Position numbers and translations under genes: made by a program. Below the pieces are notes generated by a model that was not told the DNA's origin, did not search any database, and saw nothing but the letters and a program-made list of their open reading frames with translations. 64,000 nucleotides of DNA, taken from assembly GCF_000142905.1 (NCBI RefSeq), contig NW_013657623.1, forward strand, positions 70,494 through 134,493, given 5' to 3'. The DNA comes from Thecamonas trahens ATCC 50062. Lineage: Eukaryota; Protista; Apusomonadida. How positions within the stretch are numbered: the stretch's first letter is position 1; each line of letters begins with the position of its first letter. Positions 1 through 32,115 of the stretch are shown in pieces.

Positions 1-2263
1 CGCAGCTCGAGTCGTTCCTCATTGTCTCGGCCTCGGCGTACGACGACATTCGCAATGCTATTGTCGACATCAAAAAGTCAGCCGTGGAGCTGGCGCTCAA
101 GCGGCTGCCGTGGCTCATTCTCGACGCCATCGAGAGCGCGTCGGACCACATTGTGGACAACCCGGCGAACATGCTGCGGCTGGTCAAGGAGGTCATTGCC
201 ACGCTCCGCGAGGGCCCGAGCGCTAAGGAGGGCCTCGTCACCCAGTTTACCGCCATCTTTACCGGCTCGGAGCCGCTCTCGTTCGCGTCGCAAGAAGAGG
301 CCGAGGAGGTCATCGAGCATCTAACTGAGGTTTTCAAGAGCGCCGCGTCGCGGGTCCAAGCCGACATTATCAACAAGATCCTGACCAACACCAAGAAGAT
401 CAACTACAACATCGGCCAGATGGTCAAGGAGCGGCTCAAGCCGCATCTCCGCCAGTACGAGGACGATCTCGAGCGGGTCCTCGCCATGAACATCGAGTTC
501 CCGGAGATCAACGCGCCGGACCTCGACGAGTTTGGCGAGGGCATCCAGGCCTCGACGCTCAAGCTTCTCGAGCAGCCGACAACCCGGGCGTGGGCCGTCA
601 AGTGGCTGTTCAAGTTTATTCCGGTCCCGTGGCTCCGCAAGAACAAGGCTTCGACCTACGAAGTTGTCCCCGCTCGCATCCGCGAGGCCTTTGACCAGGG
701 CATCCGGCGGGTCTTTGACTCGACGCTCGAGGCCTCCAAGCAGCTTTCGCACGTCCTCCAGAGGGTCGTCGATGAGTACGGCGGTCAGGTCGAGAACGAG
801 CTCAACAAGCTCATCTCGCGCATCCGTCAGTCGATCGAGAACAAGAAGTCGACCCATGACCGCTCCATCTTTGTCAAGCACCTGTGCGAGGAGCAGCTGT
901 GGAAGCTCGAGGAGTACTACCGCCGGGCCCGCGACCTCGCGGTTCTCCTTGAGGCGCACGGCGGGAGCGGCGAGAGCGAAGACGGCGCGAGCGAGTCGGC
1001 CTCAAGCGAGTCGTCCGCCGGAGGCGGGAGCTCTGCGAGCACAAGCGGAGCAAGCGGAAGCGAAGAGGAGGCCATCGAGTGGGGCAAGAACCCAACAACG
1101 CCACGGTTTAAGCGGTTCGGGTACAAAGTGAGCGTGCCCAAGGCGTCGATCCTCTACCCGCGCCAGCTCTCACGAGTGGTCATTGCCACGGACGTGGCCA
1201 AGCTCCGAGAGGCGTCGCGGGCCAGCGGGAGCGGGAGCGGGAGCGGCAACAGTGCAGGCTCTGTGGCCGGTGGCGGGCGCAAGGTCACGTTTGGCAAGAG
1301 CCGTGTCGGCGCGAGCGCGAGTAGCGGAGGTGCAGGCGCAAGCGGACAGTCGTCGTCGGCGGCTGCGCTCATCGAGTCCAAGTACGGCGGAGTGGGCGTG
1401 AAGAAGAAGACCTCGTACCTCGAGTTCAAGATCAAGTACGGGACGTTCACGGTTGGGCGTGAGCTTGGGCGCGGGGCGTTTGCCACGGTCTACGCTGGTG
1501 AGTACAACGGGCGGCGAGTGGCCATCAAGGACATGCGGATCCGCAAGAACCGTGTGGACGAGGCCATCGGCGAGGTGGAGATCATGTGGAAGCTCTCGCA
1601 CCCGAACCTCGTCGAGTTCCTCGGCTTTTCCTCGCACGGCTCGTCGTTCTTTATTCTTATGGAGCACATGCAGGGCGGCTCGCTCCGAGACTGGTTCAAC
1701 GACCACGAGGGCGACGCGGGAGCCATGAGCTACGGCGACCGGGTTCTCCTCGTCGAGGACATCACTCTCGGACTCGAACACATGCACTCCAAGGGCGTTC
1801 TCCACCGCGACCTCAAGGCCGGGAACGTCCTCCTCGAGGAGAGCGAGGGCCGGCTCCGCGGCAAGCTCTCCGATTTTGGCACGTCCAAGTCGTCGCGGAC
1901 GCCCGTGGCCTCGGTCTACCAGACCGTCAAGGGCACGCCGGTCTACATGCCGCCGGAGCTTCTCTCGTCGTGGGCAAACAGGCGGAACAAGGCCCGATAC
2001 TCGGCAACCATCGACATCTACGCCCTTGCCATGATCATGTTTGAGCTATGGACAACCGCGCCGCTCATCGAGTCGGCCGACCAGTTCAACATCGACGAGA
2101 TCCTCCGCGGCCGGCGGCCCGACTTTCCTCCTGGCTTCCCGCCGAGCACCCGCCGCTCCACGCACTTATCGTCGCGTGCTGGGCCAACGATGCCGGCTCG
2201 CGTCCAAGCGCCGGCGAGGTTGTCAAGCGGCTCAAGGTTGTCCGAGGTGAAATGGGATTGTGA
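1..2263 (+). CDS. 5'-truncated gene: helical stalk paralogous to the CrfC-like dynamin at 27002-32115, Ser/Gly linker, C-terminal TKL-type protein kinase; one-base frameshift near 2138-2140
   Basis: Frame 3 is open from base 3 (QLESFLIVSASAYDD...). Kinase motifs: GRGAFATV, VAIK, HRDLKAGN, DFG, GTPVYMPPE, DIYALAMI. Subdomain XI (LIVACWANDAGSRPS) lies in the shifted frame that ends at TGA 2263; adding one C to TTCCC joins the frames. Confidence 0.85.
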
Positions 2264-2392: not shown

Positions 2393-2394
2393 TA

Positions 2395-2467
2395 TGGTCA
2401 GAGCGGGGCTCGAACCCGCGACCGACAGCTTATTAGACTGTCGCTCTACCGACTGAGCTACCCGACC
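2395..2467 (-). tRNA. tRNA-Ile (anticodon AAU)
   Basis: Reverse complement GGTCGGGTAGCTCAGTCGGTAGAGCGACAGTCTAATAAGCTGTCGGTCGCGGGTTCGAGCCCCGCTCTGACCA folds as a cloverleaf: acceptor GGTCGGG/TCTGACC, anticodon stem ACAGT/GCTGT with loop CT-AAT-AA, T-loop TTCGAGC. Confidence 0.95.
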
Positions 2468-2793
2468 AATCTGAAGACTGCAGGGAGTTCACACTATTTA
2501 TTACATTCATCACATTGCTACAGGTGAGCCTGCTGGCCTCAATACCTTGCACACAACAGAGTTGGGGGGGGGGGGCGTATCTCCCCGAAAGCCATGACTC
2601 CACCGGCATGGATAATAGTCTCCGTAGCCCGTATGCAAGGTGAACAAGTGTCGCTGATTGGCTCGCCCCCCGTGCGGCAGGCGAGATGAAAGTAGCTCGA
2701 TGGCGGCGAGGAGCACCTGATGCAAGACAGAGATGACAGGCGTGCAAGGGGGGGGACTCACGCACCACCACTCTCTGTCTCCGAACCAGCGGC

Positions 2794-4356
2794 ATGGGTA
2801 TGTCGGAATGGAGTGAGATGACAAGGCAGTGGTGGGAGAGTTGGACAGGAATCAGTGTGTGGCTCTTGTGGCTGGTTCTTGTTCCTGTCTTGGCTACTAC
2901 CGTCTTGCCTATGGTCTGGTGGTGGCCATCACGTCGGTGGCTTCCAGGTTGGGCAGACCTTCCGCTCATCAATCTCATCATTGTCTTGGCCAACTTGTCA
3001 CGATTGTATGAATGGATGACCGATTGCTCGCTCTCGTTTGGCTGGACGTGGACTGTGGTTCTTCCCATGCAACTGCGATTTGTTGGCATTACTCATCCAG
3101 ATGATGTCAAGCATGTCCTTCGTGATAACTTTGATAACTACGTCAAGGGCGAGACCTTTGGTGCTCTCGTCAATGAGCTCCTGGGTGGTGGCATCTTCAA
3201 CTCGGATGGAAAGGCCTGGTATCGTCAGCGGAAAATTGCATCGCATCTCTTTCATGTCCGCAACTTTAAGGAGACCATGGTCCCGGTCTTCCTTGCTCAC
3301 GCCCGCAAGGTTGCCCGCTTGCTTGACGCTACAGCTGCTACTGGTCATCATGCAGTCATCGACATGCATGATGTCTTCTACCGGTACACTCTCGATTCTG
3401 CTGGCGTCATCGCCTTTTCCAAGGACATCGGCTCGCTCGAGAACCGTGATGTTCCGTTTGCGCGCGCCTTTGACTACCTCCAGTGGGGCTGCCTCATGCG
3501 CGGCTTCACCCCGCTCTGGTGGCTCTGGCGTGACCTTGGCCTTTCGCCGATCGAGAATCGGATGCGGCGAGAGCTCGCTGTCCTTGATGACTACATCCGG
3601 ACGGCGGTTCTCGATTCTGATGATCCGCCTGCGGATGGACAGCAAGGCGCGTCGATCATTGAGCTGTTCAAGGCTTCGTCGCTCCGGCCGGACTCGCTGA
3701 GGCACGGGCCTGACGACGAGGCCGGGCGCGAGGAGGAGCTTCTCTTTCTGCGAGATCTTGTCGTCAACTTTATCATTGCCGGCCGAGACACGACCGGTGC
3801 TGCGCTCTCATGGCTCTTCTACCTCCTCGCCATGCATCCTCAGGTGCGGGACGAGGTTGTGGCCGAGATCGACGAGGTGCTCGATGGGGCCGACATGGCG
3901 TATGGCGACATACCGCGGCTGCCGCTCCTCCACGCCGCGGTCAAGGAGACGCTGCGGCTGTATCCTTCGGTCCCGCGCGACCTCAAGGTCTCGGTCTCGG
4001 CCGACGTCCTACCGGGCTCGGGTGCGGCAGTGGCGCCGGGCGTGTGGATCGTGTACATGCCGTACGTCATGGGCCGGCTGCCGGCGCTGTGGGGGCCGGA
4101 CGCAGCGAGCTTTCGGCCACAGAGGTGGCTCGAACCGGATTTCGAGCCGCCGTCGGCGTACAAGTTCATTGCCTTTAACGCCGGGAAGCGGTCGTGCCTC
4201 GGCGAGCGCATGGCGTACCAGGAGATTATGGCGTGCAGTGTCCACTTGCTCCAGCGGTTTGTGCTGGACGTTGCCCCGGGCGCCGACGTCCGACCGGCGA
4301 CCCAAATCACGCTCGCCATGGCCAACGGACTTCCGATGAACGTGCGCGAGCGATAA
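2794..4356 (+). CDS. Cytochrome P450, CYP86/CYP704-like (fatty-acid hydroxylase-like)
   Basis: N-terminal TM anchor, I-helix AGRDTT, ETLRLYP, FRPQRW, heme motif FNAGKRSCLG; NFDNYVKG is typical of this clan. Confidence 0.93.
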   Translation: MGMSEWSEMTRQWWESWTGISVWLLWLVLVPVLATTVLPMVWWWPSRRWLPGWADLPLINLIIVLANLSRLYEWMTDCSLSFGWTWTVVLPMQLRFVGITHPDDVKHVLRDNFDNYVKGETFGALVNELLGGGIFNSDGKAWYRQRKIASHLFHVRNFKETMVPVFLAHARKVARLLDATAATGHHAVIDMHDVFYRYTLDSAGVIAFSKDIGSLENRDVPFARAFDYLQWGCLMRGFTPLWWLWRDLGLSPIENRMRRELAVLDDYIRTAVLDSDDPPADGQQGASIIELFKASSLRPDSLRHGPDDEAGREEELLFLRDLVVNFIIAGRDTTGAALSWLFYLLAMHPQVRDEVVAEIDEVLDGADMAYGDIPRLPLLHAAVKETLRLYPSVPRDLKVSVSADVLPGSGAAVAPGVWIVYMPYVMGRLPALWGPDAASFRPQRWLEPDFEPPSAYKFIAFNAGKRSCLGERMAYQEIMACSVHLLQRFVLDVAPGADVRPATQITLAMANGLPMNVRER

Positions 4357-27001: not shown

Positions 27002-30000
27002 TCACACCGCTTGCGTGATTGCAGAGTCGACAAACACGTCATCCACCTCGGAGTAGTCGGAGCTGAGCGGGCAGAGCTCCGAGTGGATTGGCGGCACGAG
27101 GAGGACGTCGAGGTCGATGAGCGACGACAGCGAGGCCTCGGACGAGGCTGGGATCTCGGCGTCAAACTCAAGCATGTTGATCAGTGACTGCGCCCGGACC
27201 CAGAACTCATTCAGCCGCCAGATCCCGTCCTCGGCCGCTGCGGCCTCGGCAAGTGACGCCTCGCGCGAGATAAGTTTGCGGTCGGCTGCCGCCTGGATCG
27301 ACGACAGCAGAGAAGCGAGGACATCTGACACCGCACTTGCGTACGATGCTAGCATCGCCGTCAGTGCAGACGCACAGTGCTGCTCCGCAGCCAAAACAAG
27401 CTCCCGGAGCGCTCCATCCATCTGCCGGCAAAAGTACGCTTGCAGCGCATCCTTGGACACGCACCACCGGCTCTTCGACTTGACCTTGACCGCCTTTTTG
27501 AGCGACCAGGAGAAGCCGAGCGATCGCGACGTCCGCTCCTCCAGCAGCTCGCTCCGCTGGCAAAAGTGACCCGCCTCGCTGTTGTTGTCGTCGTCGTTAC
27601 TGCTTCCGCCGCCTCTCCCCGATGACAGCAGCTCGAGCGAGGTCTGCAGCGCGTCTGGCTCCAGCCCGAGCTCCGGAAAGGCCACCGACACGTCGAGCAG
27701 CTCCGAGACCATGATCCGATACTGTGCAAGTAGTGGTGCAAGATGCTTCTCCACAAGCGCCTTCAGCTGGACAGAGACTGGCTTTGTCACCGCCACCAGC
27801 TCGGCCACCATGTCGTTGCGCGCAGACTGGAGCGCGAGCTCAAACAGAACCGCCACCTCGTCCAGCCAGTCGAGCGCCGCATCCTTGGTCTCAAACACAA
27901 ACTGGCCCGACGACAGCACACACTGCGTCACCGAGCCCTCATTCTCGCTCTCGCTCTCGCTGCTGCCGCCGAGCACCTCGTCGTTCGTCTCAAAGTCAAA
28001 CACGTGCTCCATCATCACCACCAGCGACGTCGGCGCCTGCGGCAGCTGCCGCACCCATTCGCTTCGCACAGAGCACCACATGGCAAACAGCCGCTGCCCG
28101 CCAGGCGTAAACACATTGTCGAGCTGCGTGAGAAAGACGCCGAGGCTCTTGTCCAGCTGCGAAACCACGATCTGCCCGCCGGCCTCCAGGACCTTGCCTA
28201 GCGCTTCGTTGATCTGCTCGTGGTTGACCTCGGAGACGACCAGGAACGTCTGCAGCGACGCCAGTGACGTCGAGCACACCGCCAGCTCATCCACCAGGCG
28301 CGCCCGGAGCGGGAGCGCCACATGTTGCACCAGCTTGGCCAGAGACGCCCGAAGCGCAATGGTCGTCGCGTTCGCGTAGCAGTACTGGAGCATCGACTCG
28401 AGTGGCGCCTCGAGCCGCGACGCCGCGTACACTGCCCGCGTTCCCATCCGGAACGCTTCCACCTCGCCGCGCTCCACCATCCGCGGGTAATTGTGCGGCG
28501 CGTCCCATGTCTCGCCATACGCAATTCGCGCAAACGCCTCCACCCACGGCTCGTCCGCCGCTGCAGGCACCTGCCACGGGTGGCTCCGCGCGTAGTTCCG
28601 CGCGTGGTTCGCAAGCTGGGCGTACTTGGCCGAGACCGGAAAGACCCGCGATGGAGGCACGCTGCACGACGCCAGCGCCGCAGTCACCGACTGCGCCACA
28701 TACTGCCGCACCCCAGCCTCGTCTAGATCTTGTCCGGACGCCTCGTTCCGCTGGTCAAACTTGTTGACAAACACAAAGGCGTCCTGCTTGAGCACAGACA
28801 GCACCGAAGACACCTTGTCCTGCAACTCAGCCTCGGCTGTCCCGTTGAGGCTCGCAAAGTCGAGCACCAGCGCAACCACAGACGCCTGCTGCAAAATGCC
28901 CTCCACAAACGCAGACAGTACAGGCATGTCCATCTCGTTTGGCCCGGGCGAGTCGATGAACGAGAGCGTGCCTGAGAGTGCCAGCAGTGCCCGCACGTCG
29001 GCCTCGGCCTCTCTGCTGCTCTCGACCTCGACCTGGTCTTCGGTCTCTGTCTCGATCTTGACCTCGACCTCAGCGTGGCAAGGCACGTCGGCTTCCTCCC
29101 CTTCATCCTCGTCGTCCGAGTCCGAGAGCGATATTCCGATCGAGGAGCACGACGAGTCGCCGCGCTCACGGAATGCCCCGACATCGCCCTCGTCAACGCC
29201 ACCAAACTCGCCGCTGCCCTCGCTCTCACCCACCACCAGCGAGGCAAAGCAAACCAGAATTTGCGGGAGGTCAACAAGCGCGAGCGGGCGCGGGCCCGGC
29301 GACGACGACAAGTCGCTCTGCGGCGGCGGCGCCTCACTGGCGGCGCCCGATGTGATCTTGACCACCTGGTCGAGAATGCCGGCCCGGGCGCCAGCACGAA
29401 AAATGTCGTTGACCTTGACAAGCGTCGCGTTGATGGCAGCCTCGCCGGCCACGGTGTACTCGCCGGCGTAGCTGTCAAACCAACCGAGCGCGGCACCCGG
29501 CGTGCCTGCTGGCGCCGTCAACTCGGTCACCAGCGACGACGACGCGCCCATGTCGAGGTCCTCAAACGCGGCGGCGCCCGGTGCGAAGAGCGCCGCCCTC
29601 AGTTGGATCACCAGCATTCGCAGCGTCTCAACACACGATGCCGGCAGCCGGAGGGTAGGCTCATGCTTGGTCGGGTCGTGTGTGATAAGGGTAGGGAGGA
29701 CAGTCATGGCTGTTGCTCGCGACGGCACCACGTCGGCGCCGACCAGGCCCGAGATGGTCGACGACTTGCCGGCATTCATCACGCCCACCACTCCGACGTA
29801 AGTGTTCGACGAGACAACGTCGACCGCCAGCTCGTGGAGGACCGCCGGGAGCTGCGCTGCCAGCGTGTCGAGCAGCGGCAGATGCACCATGTCGCGAAGG
29901 AGCGACTCAAGGAGAGCGCAGAGAGTGACAAGCTCCTTCTGGAAGGTGACCGTCTCGAGCACCGCCCGCGCCGCGCCTGCGGCGTCGTCGTCGCGCGCCG

Positions 30001-32115
30001 CCGCCGAGGCTGCAAAATACTGTGAGAGCGCGGCGTACTTGGCGGTGATCCGAGACACCAGATCCACTAGGCCGGCGTCGGGGATCCGCGGCGAGCCCGG
30101 GTTACGCCCGCCGTGGTGCGATGCGGCCCGCGGGCGGACCGGGGTCACAGCCGGCGCAGGCCTTTCGATCAGATCCATAAAGGCCTGCAACGCAGTCCGC
30201 CCGTCCGACAGCTGCATCGTCTCAAGCAAGGCCTGCGTCGAGTCGTGGAGGACATAGCACGGAGTGTATACAGCGCCAAACGCGGTTTCGGGATCCGACA
30301 GCACCTTGGGCTTGAGAAGAAAGAGATGCAGCCGTCGCGCGCTTGGCAGTAGCGACAGCGCCGCAGCTTGGCCACCAAGCACAGGCACTTTGCGGGTGAG
30401 CAGCTCGATGACCATGCATGCCAGCTCGGCAGTCATGAGCGGGACAGTGTCGTCAAAGAGAACCGCAAACCGGGAGAGGCGAAGCGGGTGACAAGCTGCG
30501 CAAGCAGGGCGCTGTTGGCGGGCTCGAGCCCGAGGCGCAACAACCACGCAAGTGCTGCAGACGCCTGTGCCGTGTTGACTTCGTACACTAGCGCGTCCGA
30601 GAATGTCGCCGACGACGCTGTCCTCAGCAGCGCCAGAAAGACGCATGGAGGAACGCTGTCCTCGAGCAGCGCCAGCGACGCCAGCCCGCTGATCGGCTCG
30701 GCCGAGAAGGCTCCTAGGTGGACTGCAGGCAGCGTGACTTGCAGCGAGTTGGCCGGTGAGACTCGTTGCGCCCGCACTGTGCACCACTTTGCCCAGACTC
30801 TGGCCACCGTTGCCTGCTCGGCCTCACTTCCGGCGACCACAATTGTGACGCCGTCGAGATCCGACACCATCAGCGGGGCGTTGTCGGTGCTTCGCAGCAC
30901 AAGCGGAGCAAGCTCGTTTGACTTGCTTGCCACTCGCCAGAGTGAAAAGTGCAGCGCCGAGGTGTGCAGGGCGTGCTCGGCGAGGATGGCCGGGATGGCC
31001 GAGGCAACTGTCGCTGCAGAGAGCACAAACATTACGGTCCACAGTGGACTCGCAGGTGTTGTGCTATCGCGATCAACAGGCACCGACTCTAGCAGCGCCC
31101 ATGGCGAATCGGTAGCCGAGCGCTCTGCCTTGCCAAATGCAACAAAGGTGATCGTTACAGGGAGTGCTGCTTGCGCCGGTAGGCGGCGCGGAGGTGACGG
31201 CTCGGGATTGGCGGTCGCGATGGACGGGCTCGCGCTCGGCTCCAGCGACCGTGACCGCTGGATGGCCGACCGGGCTGAGAGCAGGGCGCGCTTGCTCTGC
31301 TTCGATGGCAGCGCTACTGCTCGTTGGCGCATGCGCCGCCGCGAGAGCATGGGGTCAAGCGGAGCCCGCACAATTCGCGGGCCGCCGCCGTACTTGGCCA
31401 CCACGTAGTCCCAAGCCTCAAACGAGACTACACGCGCGTGCGGTACCGACGCCGCCACATGCGAAAGAAGCGGTGCAGTGCTGACCGGCGGTGGCGGCGG
31501 CCCGCAGCGACCGACATGGGCCATCCACTGCTGGAACCAGTCGGCGGGGAGAAGGCAACCGTGGCCGGTCGGAGTCAGAGCCCGGCGTGCGACGTCGATT
31601 TCGACATCATCGACTTCTTGCCCATCTCGATCACCTTGGAACTCGCCATCCAAGCCCCTCTTATCCCCAGCTTCCATCATTCTCGCTGCGGCAACGGCCC
31701 TGATCTCGGCGCTGGACGTTGATGCGTTCAGAATGTCTCTCTCCACCTCTACACCCGACGCCGTTGTGATTCTCCTTGCTCCGATCCGTCTGCGCGAAGA
31801 CGCTGATGGCGACGACGATGGCGACGAGACAAACGATGCAGCCCCAGCCCGAGCCCCAGCCCCCGTCCCAGCCCCAGCCCCCGTCCCAGCCCCAGCAGCG
31901 GCCGTAGATAGCGGAATCGACGTCACATTCGATGACGAGGACGACGATGAGCCGTGTAGCAAGCCATGGGTATTCCCTTGTCTTCTTCCGTCTTGATCAT
32001 TCCTGCTTCCCTCAGCTGAGGGTGATCCAGCACTCTCAGCACCATTTGATGATGGGCTGGTAGAGATGGTTGACAAGGTGGTAACTCGTCGTAGTCTCCG
32101 GTTGAACAGAGCCAT
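27002..32115 (-). CDS. DUSP domain + CrfC/YjdA-type (bacterial dynamin-like) GTPase + helical stalk; one-base frameshift near 30488
   Basis: DUSP: LLPADWFQQW..PPPVSTAPL..VSFEAWDYVVAKYGGGPRIVR. GTPase: G1 VGVMNAGKSS, VPSRATAMTVLPTLI, G3 FIDSPGPNE, G4 FVNKFDQ, VFPVSA. ORFs 30433-32115 and 27002-30787 join by adding one base. Confidence 0.82.

What the first reader, a model, noticed from the sequence alone, without database searches (positions are those of the whole stretch)
1..2263. Second paralog: the same dynamin-like stalk fused to a TKL protein kinase (predicted GTPase-kinase)
The first ~300 aa align collinearly by eye with the post-GTPase stalk of the 27002-32115 protein: QLESFLIVSASAYDDIRNAI vs SLQTFLVVSEVNHEQINEAL; LSFASQEEAEEVIEHLTEVF vs FVFETKDAALDWLDEVAVLF; MVKERLKPHLRQYEDDLERVLAMNIEFPEI vs LVEKHLAPLLAQYRIMVSELLDVSVAFPEL; EQPTTRAWAVKW vs EERTSRSLGFSW; QLWKLEEYYRRARDL vs GIWRLNEFWVRAQSL. 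Here the stalk leads to a kinase with intact catalytic motifs. Inference: a CrfC-type GTPase lies just upstream of the window, making a dynamin-like GTPase-kinase analogous in logic to ROCO/LRRK proteins. Two paralogs 27 kb apart with different partner domains point to a modular family, possibly for membrane-damage sensing or defence.
Basis: partly seen in the sequence, partly recalled or inferred. Interest (0 to 1): 0.85.

Follow-up and report, generated by a model that had tools for sequence, protein, structure and literature searches.

The report
Dynamin-like GTPase fused to kinase
Window 1-2263 is the tail of one very long gene of the protist Thecamonas trahens that joins a bacterial-type dynamin-like GTPase to an active protein kinase, a domain combination I found described in no paper, although the gene is in public databases and possibly similar proteins exist in animals.

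Summary
The observation and the main prediction are confirmed. The frame that enters the window at base 3 stays open for 1,280 codons upstream. GLMKAGKSS, DSPG and NKYD lie 0.5-1.2 kb before the window, in the same frame. Pfam finds Dynamin_N and Pkinase in one protein. NCBIfam's best model is CrfC (E 1e-54, below the equivalog cut-off). An AlphaFold model of the GTPase plus stalk (pLDDT 88) matches BDLP, SynDLP and IniA.

The frame change at base 2137 is an assembly error. Three independent runs carry one extra C there, which restores the end of the kinase.

The genome is Thecamonas trahens. The gene is already public as a 1,928-aa model, with a false intron at that error.

There are four paralogs:
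- A (this gene): no DUSP domain, canonical kinase.
- C and D: DUSP, GTPase and a conserved pseudokinase.
- B (window 27002-32115): DUSP and GTPase, no kinase.

The GTPase modules form one clade beside ~800-aa bacterial "dynamin family" proteins.

The mechanism is inferred only: GTP-dependent assembly brings the kinase domains together and activates them. An atlas search points to Dynamin_N-plus-kinase proteins in molluscs and cnidarians, and to DSTYK. I could not test that link. Interest is moderate to high.

The parts
1..1004 (+). C-terminal ~334 residues of the helical stalk (neck and trunk) of the dynamin-like module. The same open frame continues upstream of the window to G000:C57:66656 (L005:1163). 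The G domain lies at L005:3790-4490, which is window -1210 to -510.
   Evidence: Open frame. Pfam Dynamin_N at residues 877-1106 of the frame. CrfC model, E 1.1e-54. AlphaFold model pLDDT 87.9 with long helices 427-783. Foldseek best matches BDLP 2j69 (E 3.9e-15), SynDLP and IniA.
579..647 (+). Aromatic and basic loop TTRAWAVKWLFKFIPVPWLRKNK between the long trunk helices. It is a candidate membrane-binding 'paddle' or partner-binding tip.
   Evidence: Sequence and coordinates. It overlaps the main low-confidence stretch inside the model (module residues 654-671). It is conserved in paralog D, and a W...WF...WG pattern stands at the same place in the consensus with 87 mostly bacterial homologs. 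Its role is inferred. No transmembrane-grade hydrophobic segment exists anywhere in the protein (maximum Kyte-Doolittle 1.56).
1005..1445 (+). Ser/Gly/Ala-rich low-complexity linker with one conserved island (1071-1205, AIEWGKNPTTPRFKRFGYKVSVPKASILYPRQLSRVVIATDVAKL).
   Evidence: Translation. The BLASTP match to paralog D runs through residue 1700 of the frame, so it covers the island.
1446..2260 (+). TKL-type protein kinase domain with all catalytic motifs intact. It is in frame 3 up to base 2137 and in frame 2 from base 2138.
   Evidence: Pkinase E 5e-43 and PK_Tyr_Ser-Thr E 4e-33. Best solved relatives are LysM receptor kinases, IRAK4, CERK1 and B-Raf. Motif coordinates. The frame-2 tail PAEHPPLHALIVACWANDAGSRPS aligns with subdomain XI of the paralogs' kinase-like domains.
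2137..2138 (+). One-base deletion in the assembly (a C missing from a run of C). It is not a real frameshift.
   Evidence: 'Put in behind 7137: C' in runs X1 (74.1 of 74.1), X2 (4.3 of 4.3) and X13 (2.2 of 2.2). The public model P0156 bridges the site with a false intron and so lacks part of the C-lobe.
2261..2263 (+). Stop codon TGA of the gene.
27002..32115 (-). Paralog B (public model AMSG_10125, 1,536 aa): DUSP domain, shared helical region, dynamin-like GTPase and stalk, no kinase.
   Evidence: ORFs. DUSP and Dynamin_N. P0002 identified with it. No kinase-like sequence in the 4.5 kb downstream of it.

Best explanation
SHOWN. Window 1-2263 is the last third of a single intron-free gene of about 6.1 kb (G000:C57:~66.7-72.76 kb, + strand) of Thecamonas trahens. 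From N- to C-terminus the protein has these parts:
- A region shared with its paralogs. It may be a ubiquitin-like fold followed by a helical bundle, but the model is of low confidence.
- Low-complexity sequence and two neck helices.
- A complete dynamin-like GTPase of the bacterial CrfC/RdcA-BDLP type, with G1-G4 intact and a long helical stalk.
- A Ser/Gly-rich linker.
- A TKL protein kinase with every catalytic motif.

It is one of four paralogs. The dynamin-like modules form one clade whose nearest relatives are ~800-aa bacterial 'dynamin family' proteins. The kinase-like domains also group together. This fits one acquisition from bacteria and one fusion, followed by duplication. This gene is the only copy with a canonical kinase.

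INFERRED (mechanism, about one chance in three). The dynamin-like module is the sensing and assembly part, and the kinase is the output. GTP-dependent G-domain dimerisation and stalk-mediated self-assembly, probably on a membrane through the aromatic/basic loop at 579-647, bring kinase domains next to each other. The kinases then trans-activate, as TKL kinases do on induced proximity. Hetero-assembly with the pseudokinase paralogs C and D and the kinase-less paralog B may modulate this. Their DUSP N-termini could supply targeting.
For: One open frame of about 2,030 codons holds GLMKAGKSS, DSPG, NKYD, VAIK, HRDLKAGN and DFG. Dynamin_N and Pkinase are found in one protein. CrfC is the best NCBIfam model. 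The fold of the module has pLDDT 87.9 and pTM 0.84, and its best structural matches are BDLP, SynDLP, IniA, Drp1, OPA1 and mitofusins.

The frame is intact once the missing C is restored, in three independent runs. RNA-library contigs at 99% identity or more lie along the gene.

The same order of domains occurs in paralog D (public model P0001), in paralog C, and in single uninterrupted genes on independent metagenome contigs: P0003, P0152 and P0154, and L027, one 6,099-nt gene.

The seven eukaryote-type dynamin-like modules form one clade (SH-aLRT 100) with pairs D-P0003, C-P0154 and B-P0005. The five fused kinase-like domains are one side of a branch (SH-aLRT 94).

Precedent for a signalling role: E. 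coli RdcA (YjdA/CrfC) is a soluble dynamin-like GTPase that activates the diguanylate cyclase DgcE by promoting its dimerisation, and the effect is gated by GTP (PMC6510439).
Against: There is no experimental datum on GTPase activity, membrane binding, assembly, kinase activity or substrates. No transcript was shown to span the GTPase and the kinase: the RNA evidence is short metatranscriptome contigs, which may include DNA. RdcA is reported as soluble, so a membrane role cannot be assumed, and the paddle assignment rests on position and composition only. The kinase tree used a haphazard set of comparison kinases and its support (94) is below the strong level. The tree of the GTPase modules is unrooted and the eukaryotic clade sits on a long branch, so neither the direction of transfer nor a donor is shown.
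Confidence: 0.6

Rival explanations
1. It belongs to an older dynamin-like-GTPase-plus-TKL-kinase lineage that also includes animal DSTYK and the ~1000-aa Dynamin_N-plus-kinase proteins of molluscs and cnidarians. This concerns ancestry and does not exclude the best explanation. On this reading the fusion dates to before the apusomonad-opisthokont split, and the Thecamonas proteins are catalytically intact relatives. They would not be a lineage-specific invention.
For: A feature search of the ESM Atlas with the GTPase-plus-kinase part gives, as nearest clusters, metazoan proteins in which 98% of members carry both Pkinase and Dynamin_N (scores 0.97 and 0.96). [quoted passage not shown] The domain order is the same. 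The kinase is TKL with IRAK-like best matches, and DSTYK is placed near the IRAKs (PMC9573974). DSTYK acts at late endosomes, a membrane site (PMC11933320). From established phylogeny, apusomonads are sister to opisthokonts.
Against: The atlas scores give no alignment and no E-value. With the GTPase-plus-stalk part alone, all 30 nearest clusters are bacterial. None of the 150 best hits of the exhaustive profile search is a ~900-1000-aa kinase-bearing protein outside the Thecamonas-like set. So any animal relatives are more distant from this module than bacterial CrfC-like proteins are. No tool could supply a DSTYK sequence, so the link was not tested.
Confidence: 0.3
2. The dynamin-like module is the effector, remodelling or tethering membranes as BDLP, DynA or IniA do. 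The kinase is a built-in regulator that phosphorylates the Ser-rich linkers of the same assembly to switch it on or off.
For: The module is a full-length dynamin-like protein by fold with an aromatic/basic tip loop. Long Ser-rich linkers flank it. In three of the four paralogs the kinase is dead or absent while G1-G4 stay invariant, so the GTPase is the constant part.
Against: The nearest characterised relative by sequence, RdcA/CrfC, is soluble and acts in signalling, not in membrane remodelling. No transmembrane or strongly hydrophobic segment is present. Retention of folded pseudokinases in two species argues for a scaffold or allosteric role and not for simple self-regulation.
Confidence: 0.2
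3. It is a soluble sensor of the cellular GTP level, working as RdcA does. The nucleotide-free or GDP form self-associates and switches on the attached kinase when GTP falls, for example on starvation, with no membrane involved.
For: CrfC/RdcA is the best-scoring curated family. The RdcA model has a low-affinity dynamin-like GTPase whose GTP-free form promotes dimerisation of a signalling enzyme. The protein has no membrane anchor.
Against: The score is far below the equivalog cut-off. The partner RdcB/YjcZ is absent from the genome. Identity to bacterial homologs is only 20-25%.
Confidence: 0.15
4. It is an artefact or a dead gene: a chimeric assembly, two adjacent genes read as one, or a pseudogene broken by the frameshift at 2137.
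For: The assembly shows a frame change inside the kinase. The other paralogs also change frame in the assembly.
Against: The frame change is a missing base, corrected by three independent runs. About 2,030 codons are free of stops. All catalytic motifs are intact. Contigs of isolate and metagenome runs lie on the GTPase, stalk, linker and kinase parts, and one isolate contig runs unbroken from the G domain through the stalk and linker to just before the kinase domain (L005:4855-6465). Relatives encode the same fusion in single genes on independent contigs.
Confidence: 0.03

Closest known systems
Bacterial CrfC / RdcA (YjdA) and the ~800-aa bacterial 'dynamin family proteins' (Pseudoalteromonas, Psychrobacter, Cytobacillus, Negativicutes)
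   Same: The G domain plus the whole stalk align end to end (profile positions about 20-770; 190-300 bits). CrfC is the best NCBIfam model. G1-G4 and a W-rich motif in the stalk are shared. The atlas neighbours of the module are all bacterial CrfC-like clusters. RdcA sets a precedent for a dynamin-like GTPase feeding a signalling enzyme.
   Different: Identity is only 20-25%. The score is far below the CrfC equivalog cut-off. The gene sits in a eukaryotic chromosome. The module is fused in cis to a eukaryotic TKL kinase and to N-terminal eukaryotic regions. There is no RdcB/YjcZ partner in the genome. A clamp-binding motif was not examined.
Nostoc BDLP, Synechocystis SynDLP, Mycobacterium IniA, Campylobacter DLP1/2 (solved bacterial dynamin-like proteins)
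   Same: These are the best structural matches of the predicted module: a G domain with neck and trunk helical bundles.
   Different: There is no detectable sequence similarity to any solved chain. TM-scores are modest (0.3-0.44), as expected for hinged multi-domain proteins. None of these proteins carries a kinase.
ROCO proteins (LRRK1/2, Dictyostelium Roco kinases, DAPK1)
   Same: The logic is the same: a GTPase whose nucleotide state and dimerisation are coupled in cis to a TKL-group kinase in one large multi-domain protein.
   Different: The GTPase here belongs to the dynamin superfamily and is not a Ras-like Roc. There is no COR domain and no LRR, ankyrin or WD40 repeats. This is convergence of design, not membership.
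[quoted passage not shown]
   Same: The domain order is the same: a dynamin-like region followed by a C-terminal TKL kinase. They are the nearest atlas clusters to the GTPase-plus-kinase part.
   Different: They are about 900-1000 aa, without the long N-terminal region or low-complexity linkers. Homology of the GTPase parts was not tested here. No paper in the library links DSTYK to dynamin.
DUSP-UBL modules of ubiquitin-specific proteases (USP4/11/15)
   Same: Paralogs B, C and D, and their metagenome orthologs, begin with a Pfam DUSP domain. The region after it, which this gene also has, shows a beta-beta-alpha-beta-beta pattern in a weak model.
   Different: No USP catalytic domain is present anywhere. 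This gene has no DUSP domain, and none was found within 6 kb upstream.

Membership tests
Dynamin superfamily (large GTPases) | G1 P-loop GxxxxGK[ST] | tested here: met
   GLMKAGKSS at L005:3800-3826. G67, K68 and S69 are invariant in 91 sequences.
Dynamin superfamily (large GTPases) | G2 threonine, G3 DxxG and G4 [NT]KxD | tested here: met
   The T of RATAMT is invariant. DSPG is present (D225 and G228 invariant). NKYD is present (N, K and D at least 90% conserved).
Dynamin superfamily (large GTPases) | Pfam Dynamin_N above its gathering score | tested here: met
   33.5 bits against a cut-off of 27, residues 877-1106; 37.4 bits in the genome scan.
Dynamin superfamily (large GTPases) | Extended helical stalk (neck and trunk) after the G domain | tested here: met
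   The AlphaFold model has pLDDT 87.9 with helices of 30-64 residues. Foldseek gives BDLP 2j69 at E 3.9e-15, then SynDLP and IniA.
Dynamin superfamily (large GTPases) | Assembly-stimulated GTP hydrolysis and self-assembly | not testable with these tools
   This needs purified protein.
CrfC / RdcA equivalog (NCBIfam NF007368) | Score above the curated equivalog cut-off | tested here: not met
   186 bits against 1146. It is still the best model by far, at E 1.1e-54, covering profile positions 49-511 of 742. The protein is therefore a relative, not an ortholog.
CrfC / RdcA equivalog (NCBIfam NF007368) | Partner protein RdcB (YjcZ, PF13990) encoded in the genome | tested here: not met
   There is no match in the own genome, while the E. 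coli control is positive.
TKL group protein kinases | Pkinase / PK_Tyr_Ser-Thr domain with the beta-3 Lys, alpha-C Glu, HRDLKxxN, DFG and [AP]PE | tested here: met
   Pkinase E 5e-43. VAIK, EVEIMW, HRDLKAGN, DFG and YMPPE are all present. The best solved relatives are LysM receptor kinases, IRAK4, CERK1, B-Raf and CTR1. No curated kinome classification was run.
ROCO proteins | Roc (Ras-like) GTPase followed by a COR domain | tested here: not met
   The Pfam scan of the whole frame at E <= 0.01 shows no Roc, COR or Ras domain.
DSTYK family | Orthology of the kinase domain and homology of the N-terminal region to DSTYK | not tested
   There is only a feature-space neighbourhood in the ESM Atlas.

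The most novel reading that the evidence does not exclude
The Thecamonas family is the catalytically intact sister of the animal DSTYK lineage. On this reading a bacterial CrfC-type dynamin-like GTPase was acquired and fused to a TKL kinase before apusomonads and opisthokonts split. The uncharacterised N-terminal ~650 residues of human DSTYK, a disease gene (urinary-tract anomalies, spastic paraplegia 23), would then be a decayed dynamin-like GTPase. In that case GTPase-driven assembly on endosomal membranes would be the ancestral way of switching this kinase on.
Probability: 0.3. Interest if true: 0.8.

Novelty: new variant of a known kind. Interest (0 to 1): 0.62.

Why it matters
Dynamin-superfamily proteins are known as mechanochemical membrane remodellers. 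The known cases of a GTPase wired in cis to a kinase are the ROCO/LRRK proteins, which use a Ras-like GTPase. Here a complete bacterial-type dynamin-like GTPase sits in a eukaryote, covalently joined to an active kinase. It has sister copies in which the kinase has become a conserved pseudokinase or has been lost. That gives a natural series for asking how dynamin-like assembly can be used for signalling. It extends to eukaryotes the idea, shown for E. coli RdcA and DgcE, that CrfC-type GTPases act by dimerising signalling enzymes.

If the link to DSTYK holds, it would also explain the unknown two-thirds of a human disease kinase.

Practically, the public gene model is wrong at its 3' end because one base is missing from the assembly.

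Tried and rejected
- Word-index protein searches with the GTPase module alone, and with GTPase plus kinase, found only the Thecamonas-like set and unrelated kinases. They say nothing about DSTYK or the bacterial relatives. The exhaustive profile search was needed.
- Pattern scans of genome contigs and metagenome contigs found only 2 and 3 distant loci at 23-27% identity. The two genome-contig loci are bacterial MAGs. They add no information on distribution.
- A sequence search of the PDB with the module's profile found nothing.
- The 'atlas' fold library was not available.
- The N-terminal region folded poorly (pLDDT 55.8 from 4 sequences), so I did not search with it. 'Ubiquitin-like plus helical bundle' is only a suggestion.
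- A DUSP domain upstream of this gene was sought with the DUSP regions of B, C and D against 10 kb of upstream DNA, and none was found.
- A kinase remnant downstream of paralog B was sought, and none was found.
- RdcB/YjcZ is absent from the genome.
- Three further Dynamin_N loci of the genome were checked for a kinase. One is Sey1/RHD3, and the other two are plain dynamin-like proteins.
- The neighbour gene on contig L027 is not the same as the neighbour of paralog D in Thecamonas.
- Introns: the two 'joints' (3409>6223 in X13, 6437>7078 in X2) have sides of only 20-21 letters and come from metagenome contigs in low-complexity sequence. I take them as artefacts, and no intron is supported.
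- Complex prediction was not used. The report does not rest on a specific binding claim that a pass would change much.
The two frames of the kinase were searched apart, and the break was written as X in the one script that joined them.
Full report
WHAT IS THERE. Frame 3 of the window is open from base 3. I located the window at G000:C57:70494-134493 and fetched the DNA upstream. Joined to that DNA, the same frame stays open for another 1,280 codons, back to L005:1163. Upstream of the window and in frame lie GLMKAGKSS (G1), the threonine of RATAMT (G2), DSPG (G3) and NKYD (G4), at window -1200 to -511. Pfam finds Dynamin_N (residues 877-1106; 33.5 bits against a cut-off of 27) and Pkinase (1762-1973; E 5e-43) in the one frame. 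NCBIfam's best model is the clamp-binding protein CrfC (E 1.1e-54, profile positions 49-511 of 742). At 186 bits against a cut-off of 1146 the protein is a relative, not an equivalog.

For the stalk alone, the local alignment score is 186, against 37 +/- 5.8 for 300 shuffles (z = 25.6), and BLASTP gives E 3e-13. The resemblance is homology, not coiled-coil composition.

THE FRAME CHANGE AT 2137. The kinase stops making sense after ...RPDFPPGF in frame 3, and its last subdomain (PAEHPPLHALIVACWANDAGSRPS...) is in frame 2. I laid contigs of four public runs on L005:1400-7399. A C is inserted behind L005:7137 (window 2137) in the isolate DNA run (depth 74 of 74), in an estuary metagenome and in a metatranscriptome. 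The assembly therefore lacks one C in a run of C, and the gene is intact. It ends at the TGA at 2261-2263. The public model of the gene (P0156, 1,928 aa, starting at MVHVFALL) hides the error behind a false intron and so lacks about 23 residues of the C-lobe. RNA-library contigs at 99% identity or more lie at eight or more places along the gene. This suggests expression, but they are short and could include DNA. No supported intron was seen.

ORGANISM AND PUBLIC STATUS. Two paralogs are, almost letter for letter, annotated proteins of Thecamonas trahens ATCC 50062. P0001 is 'TKL protein kinase' XP_013762825.1 on a 680,870-bp contig. P0002 is AMSG_10125 on a 255,174-bp contig. Both contig lengths equal those of C2 and C57. 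The genome is thus that of the apusomonad T. trahens, and the gene is in public databases with automatic Pfam labels. I found no paper that describes a dynamin-kinase fusion or these genes. The broad survey of dynamin-related proteins that includes Thecamonas explicitly left bacterial-type dynamin-like proteins out (PMC10280142).

FOLD. An alignment of the four paralogs and 87 hits of the profile search, mostly ~800-aa bacterial-type proteins, gave a confident model of residues 819-1614 (pLDDT 87.9, pTM 0.84). It has two N-terminal neck helices, a G domain, and helices of 30-64 residues. Foldseek ranks Nostoc BDLP first (E 3.9e-15), then SynDLP, IniA, Drp1, the Campylobacter DLP pair, OPA1 and mitofusins. 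The stretch in the window is therefore the trunk and neck of a full-length dynamin-like protein. The main weak spot inside the model (residues 654-671) overlaps TTRAWAVKWLFKFIPVPWLRKNK (window 579-647), an aromatic and basic loop between the long trunk helices. It is conserved in paralog D and echoed by a W...WF...WG pattern in the bacterial homologs. It lies where BDLP has its membrane paddle, as I recall, and I propose that role for it as an inference. The protein has no transmembrane-grade segment.

KINASE. The domain has GRGAFATV, VAIK, the alpha-C Glu, HRDLKAGN, DFG and YMPPE. Its best solved relatives are LysM receptor kinases, IRAK4, CERK1, B-Raf and CTR1, all of the TKL group.

THE FAMILY. 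The genome holds four copies:
- A is this gene.
- B is window 27002-32115(-).
- C is C2:~521.7-528.6 kb.
- D is C2:~552.7-558.4 kb.
B, C and D start with a Pfam DUSP domain. A does not, and no DUSP-like sequence lies within 6 kb upstream. A does share with the others the ~330 residues that follow the DUSP domain. C and D end in kinase-like domains that have lost the catalytic residues: HANLNLGN with no DFG in C, and CEFLDAHS with DAY in D. The same losses are seen in their orthologs from metagenome contigs (P0154, P0003). These are therefore conserved pseudokinases, not decaying genes. B has no kinase and none lies downstream of it. G1-G4 are invariant in all four.

RELATIVES. An exhaustive profile search of 1.84 billion representatives found only seven clusters of this long type: the Thecamonas genes, and proteins from ENA and Logan assemblies with the same architecture. 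After them, the listed hits are mostly ~800-aa proteins. Those that carry a name are bacterial 'dynamin family proteins'. P0152 is encoded as one uninterrupted 6,099-nt gene on an independent contig, next to a gene with a CRIB-like motif.

In a tree of 75 modules, the seven eukaryote-type sequences are one clade (SH-aLRT 100) with pairs D-P0003, C-P0154 and B-P0005. The duplications therefore predate the split from that unnamed relative. The five fused kinase-like domains also fall on one side of a branch among 85 kinases (SH-aLRT 94). The simplest history is one bacterial-type module acquired and one fusion to a TKL kinase, then duplication, then loss of DUSP (A), loss of the kinase (B) and decay to a pseudokinase (C, D). 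The tree is unrooted and the comparison kinases were not curated, so this history is probable, not shown.

HOW IT MAY WORK. What is shown is the architecture and the intact motifs. The mechanism is inferred from the families. Dynamin-like proteins dimerise through their G domains on GTP and assemble through their stalks. TKL kinases are commonly switched on by induced proximity. The closest characterised relative, E. coli RdcA (YjdA/CrfC), activates a signalling enzyme, the diguanylate cyclase DgcE, by promoting its dimerisation in a GTP-gated way (PMC6510439). I therefore favour an assembly-gated kinase: the dynamin-like part senses nucleotide state, a surface, or both, and the kinase is the output. 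The pseudokinase and kinase-less paralogs may co-assemble, since bacterial dynamin-like proteins often work in pairs. The rivals are that the kinase merely regulates a membrane-remodelling machine, or that the protein is a soluble GTP-level sensor.

THE DSTYK LEAD. A feature search of the ESM Atlas with the GTPase-plus-kinase part returned, as nearest clusters, ~1000-aa proteins of molluscs and cnidarians in which 98% of members carry both Pkinase and Dynamin_N, followed by DSTYK clusters. With the GTPase-plus-stalk part alone, all neighbours were bacterial CrfC-like clusters. So dynamin-like-plus-kinase proteins are not unique to Thecamonas at the level of database annotation, and this lowers the claim of a wholly new architecture. 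I could not test whether they share ancestry with this family. No tool gave me a DSTYK sequence. The word search did not retrieve one. The atlas fold library was absent. No paper links DSTYK to dynamin. Because apusomonads are the sister group of opisthokonts, common descent is plausible. I put it at about 0.3.

VERDICT. The gene is real, intact and public, but undescribed in the papers I could search. It is best filed as a new variant: a bacterial-type dynamin-like GTPase fused to a TKL kinase, within a four-member family that also carries DUSP domains and pseudokinases. Function and mechanism are open.

Noticed in passing
window 2394-2468 (-): A tRNA-Ile gene (anticodon AAT) lies 131 nt after the stop codon of the gene, on the opposite strand.
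   Followed up: no
window 2794-4356 (+): A 520-aa ORF looks like a cytochrome P450: FNAGKRSCLG, a heme-binding-loop pattern, is seen in the translation. It was not scanned against Pfam.
   Followed up: no
L005:2827 (upstream of the window, window -2173): A six-base in-frame insertion, GGAGCT, is present in two runs of the organism (X1, X5) relative to the assembly. It lies in a Gly/Ala-rich low-complexity stretch. It is either a polymorphism or a collapsed repeat.
   Followed up: no
L017 about 7143 (G000:C2:~527143); also window 30433-30787 and L018 3875-4187: The other three paralogs also change reading frame in the assembly. In C the change is inside the stalk, with no gap in the match. The public models of B and D bridge theirs with introns. 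Some of these may be one-base assembly errors like the one at window 2137.
   Followed up: partly
L017:7200-8627 and L018:3186-4187: The kinase-like domains of paralogs C and D lack the catalytic Asp and the DFG motif. So do their orthologs from another organism (P0154, P0003). These are conserved pseudokinases attached to GTPases with intact motifs.
   Followed up: yes
P0006 (Logan assembly, 1,197 aa): This protein has two dynamin-like units in tandem. Both fall inside the bacterial clade of the tree.
   Followed up: partly
L021:2551-6402 (G000:C8:538551-542402): A Sey1/RHD3-type GTPase has an N-terminal extension of about 560 residues. A TPR-rich ORF overlaps it in another frame.
   Followed up: no
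runs X2-X4, X13-X15: DNA nearly identical to this Thecamonas gene occurs in estuary and marine metagenomes and in 'subsurface' metatranscriptomes. The organism or a very close strain is therefore present in environmental samples.
   Followed up: partly
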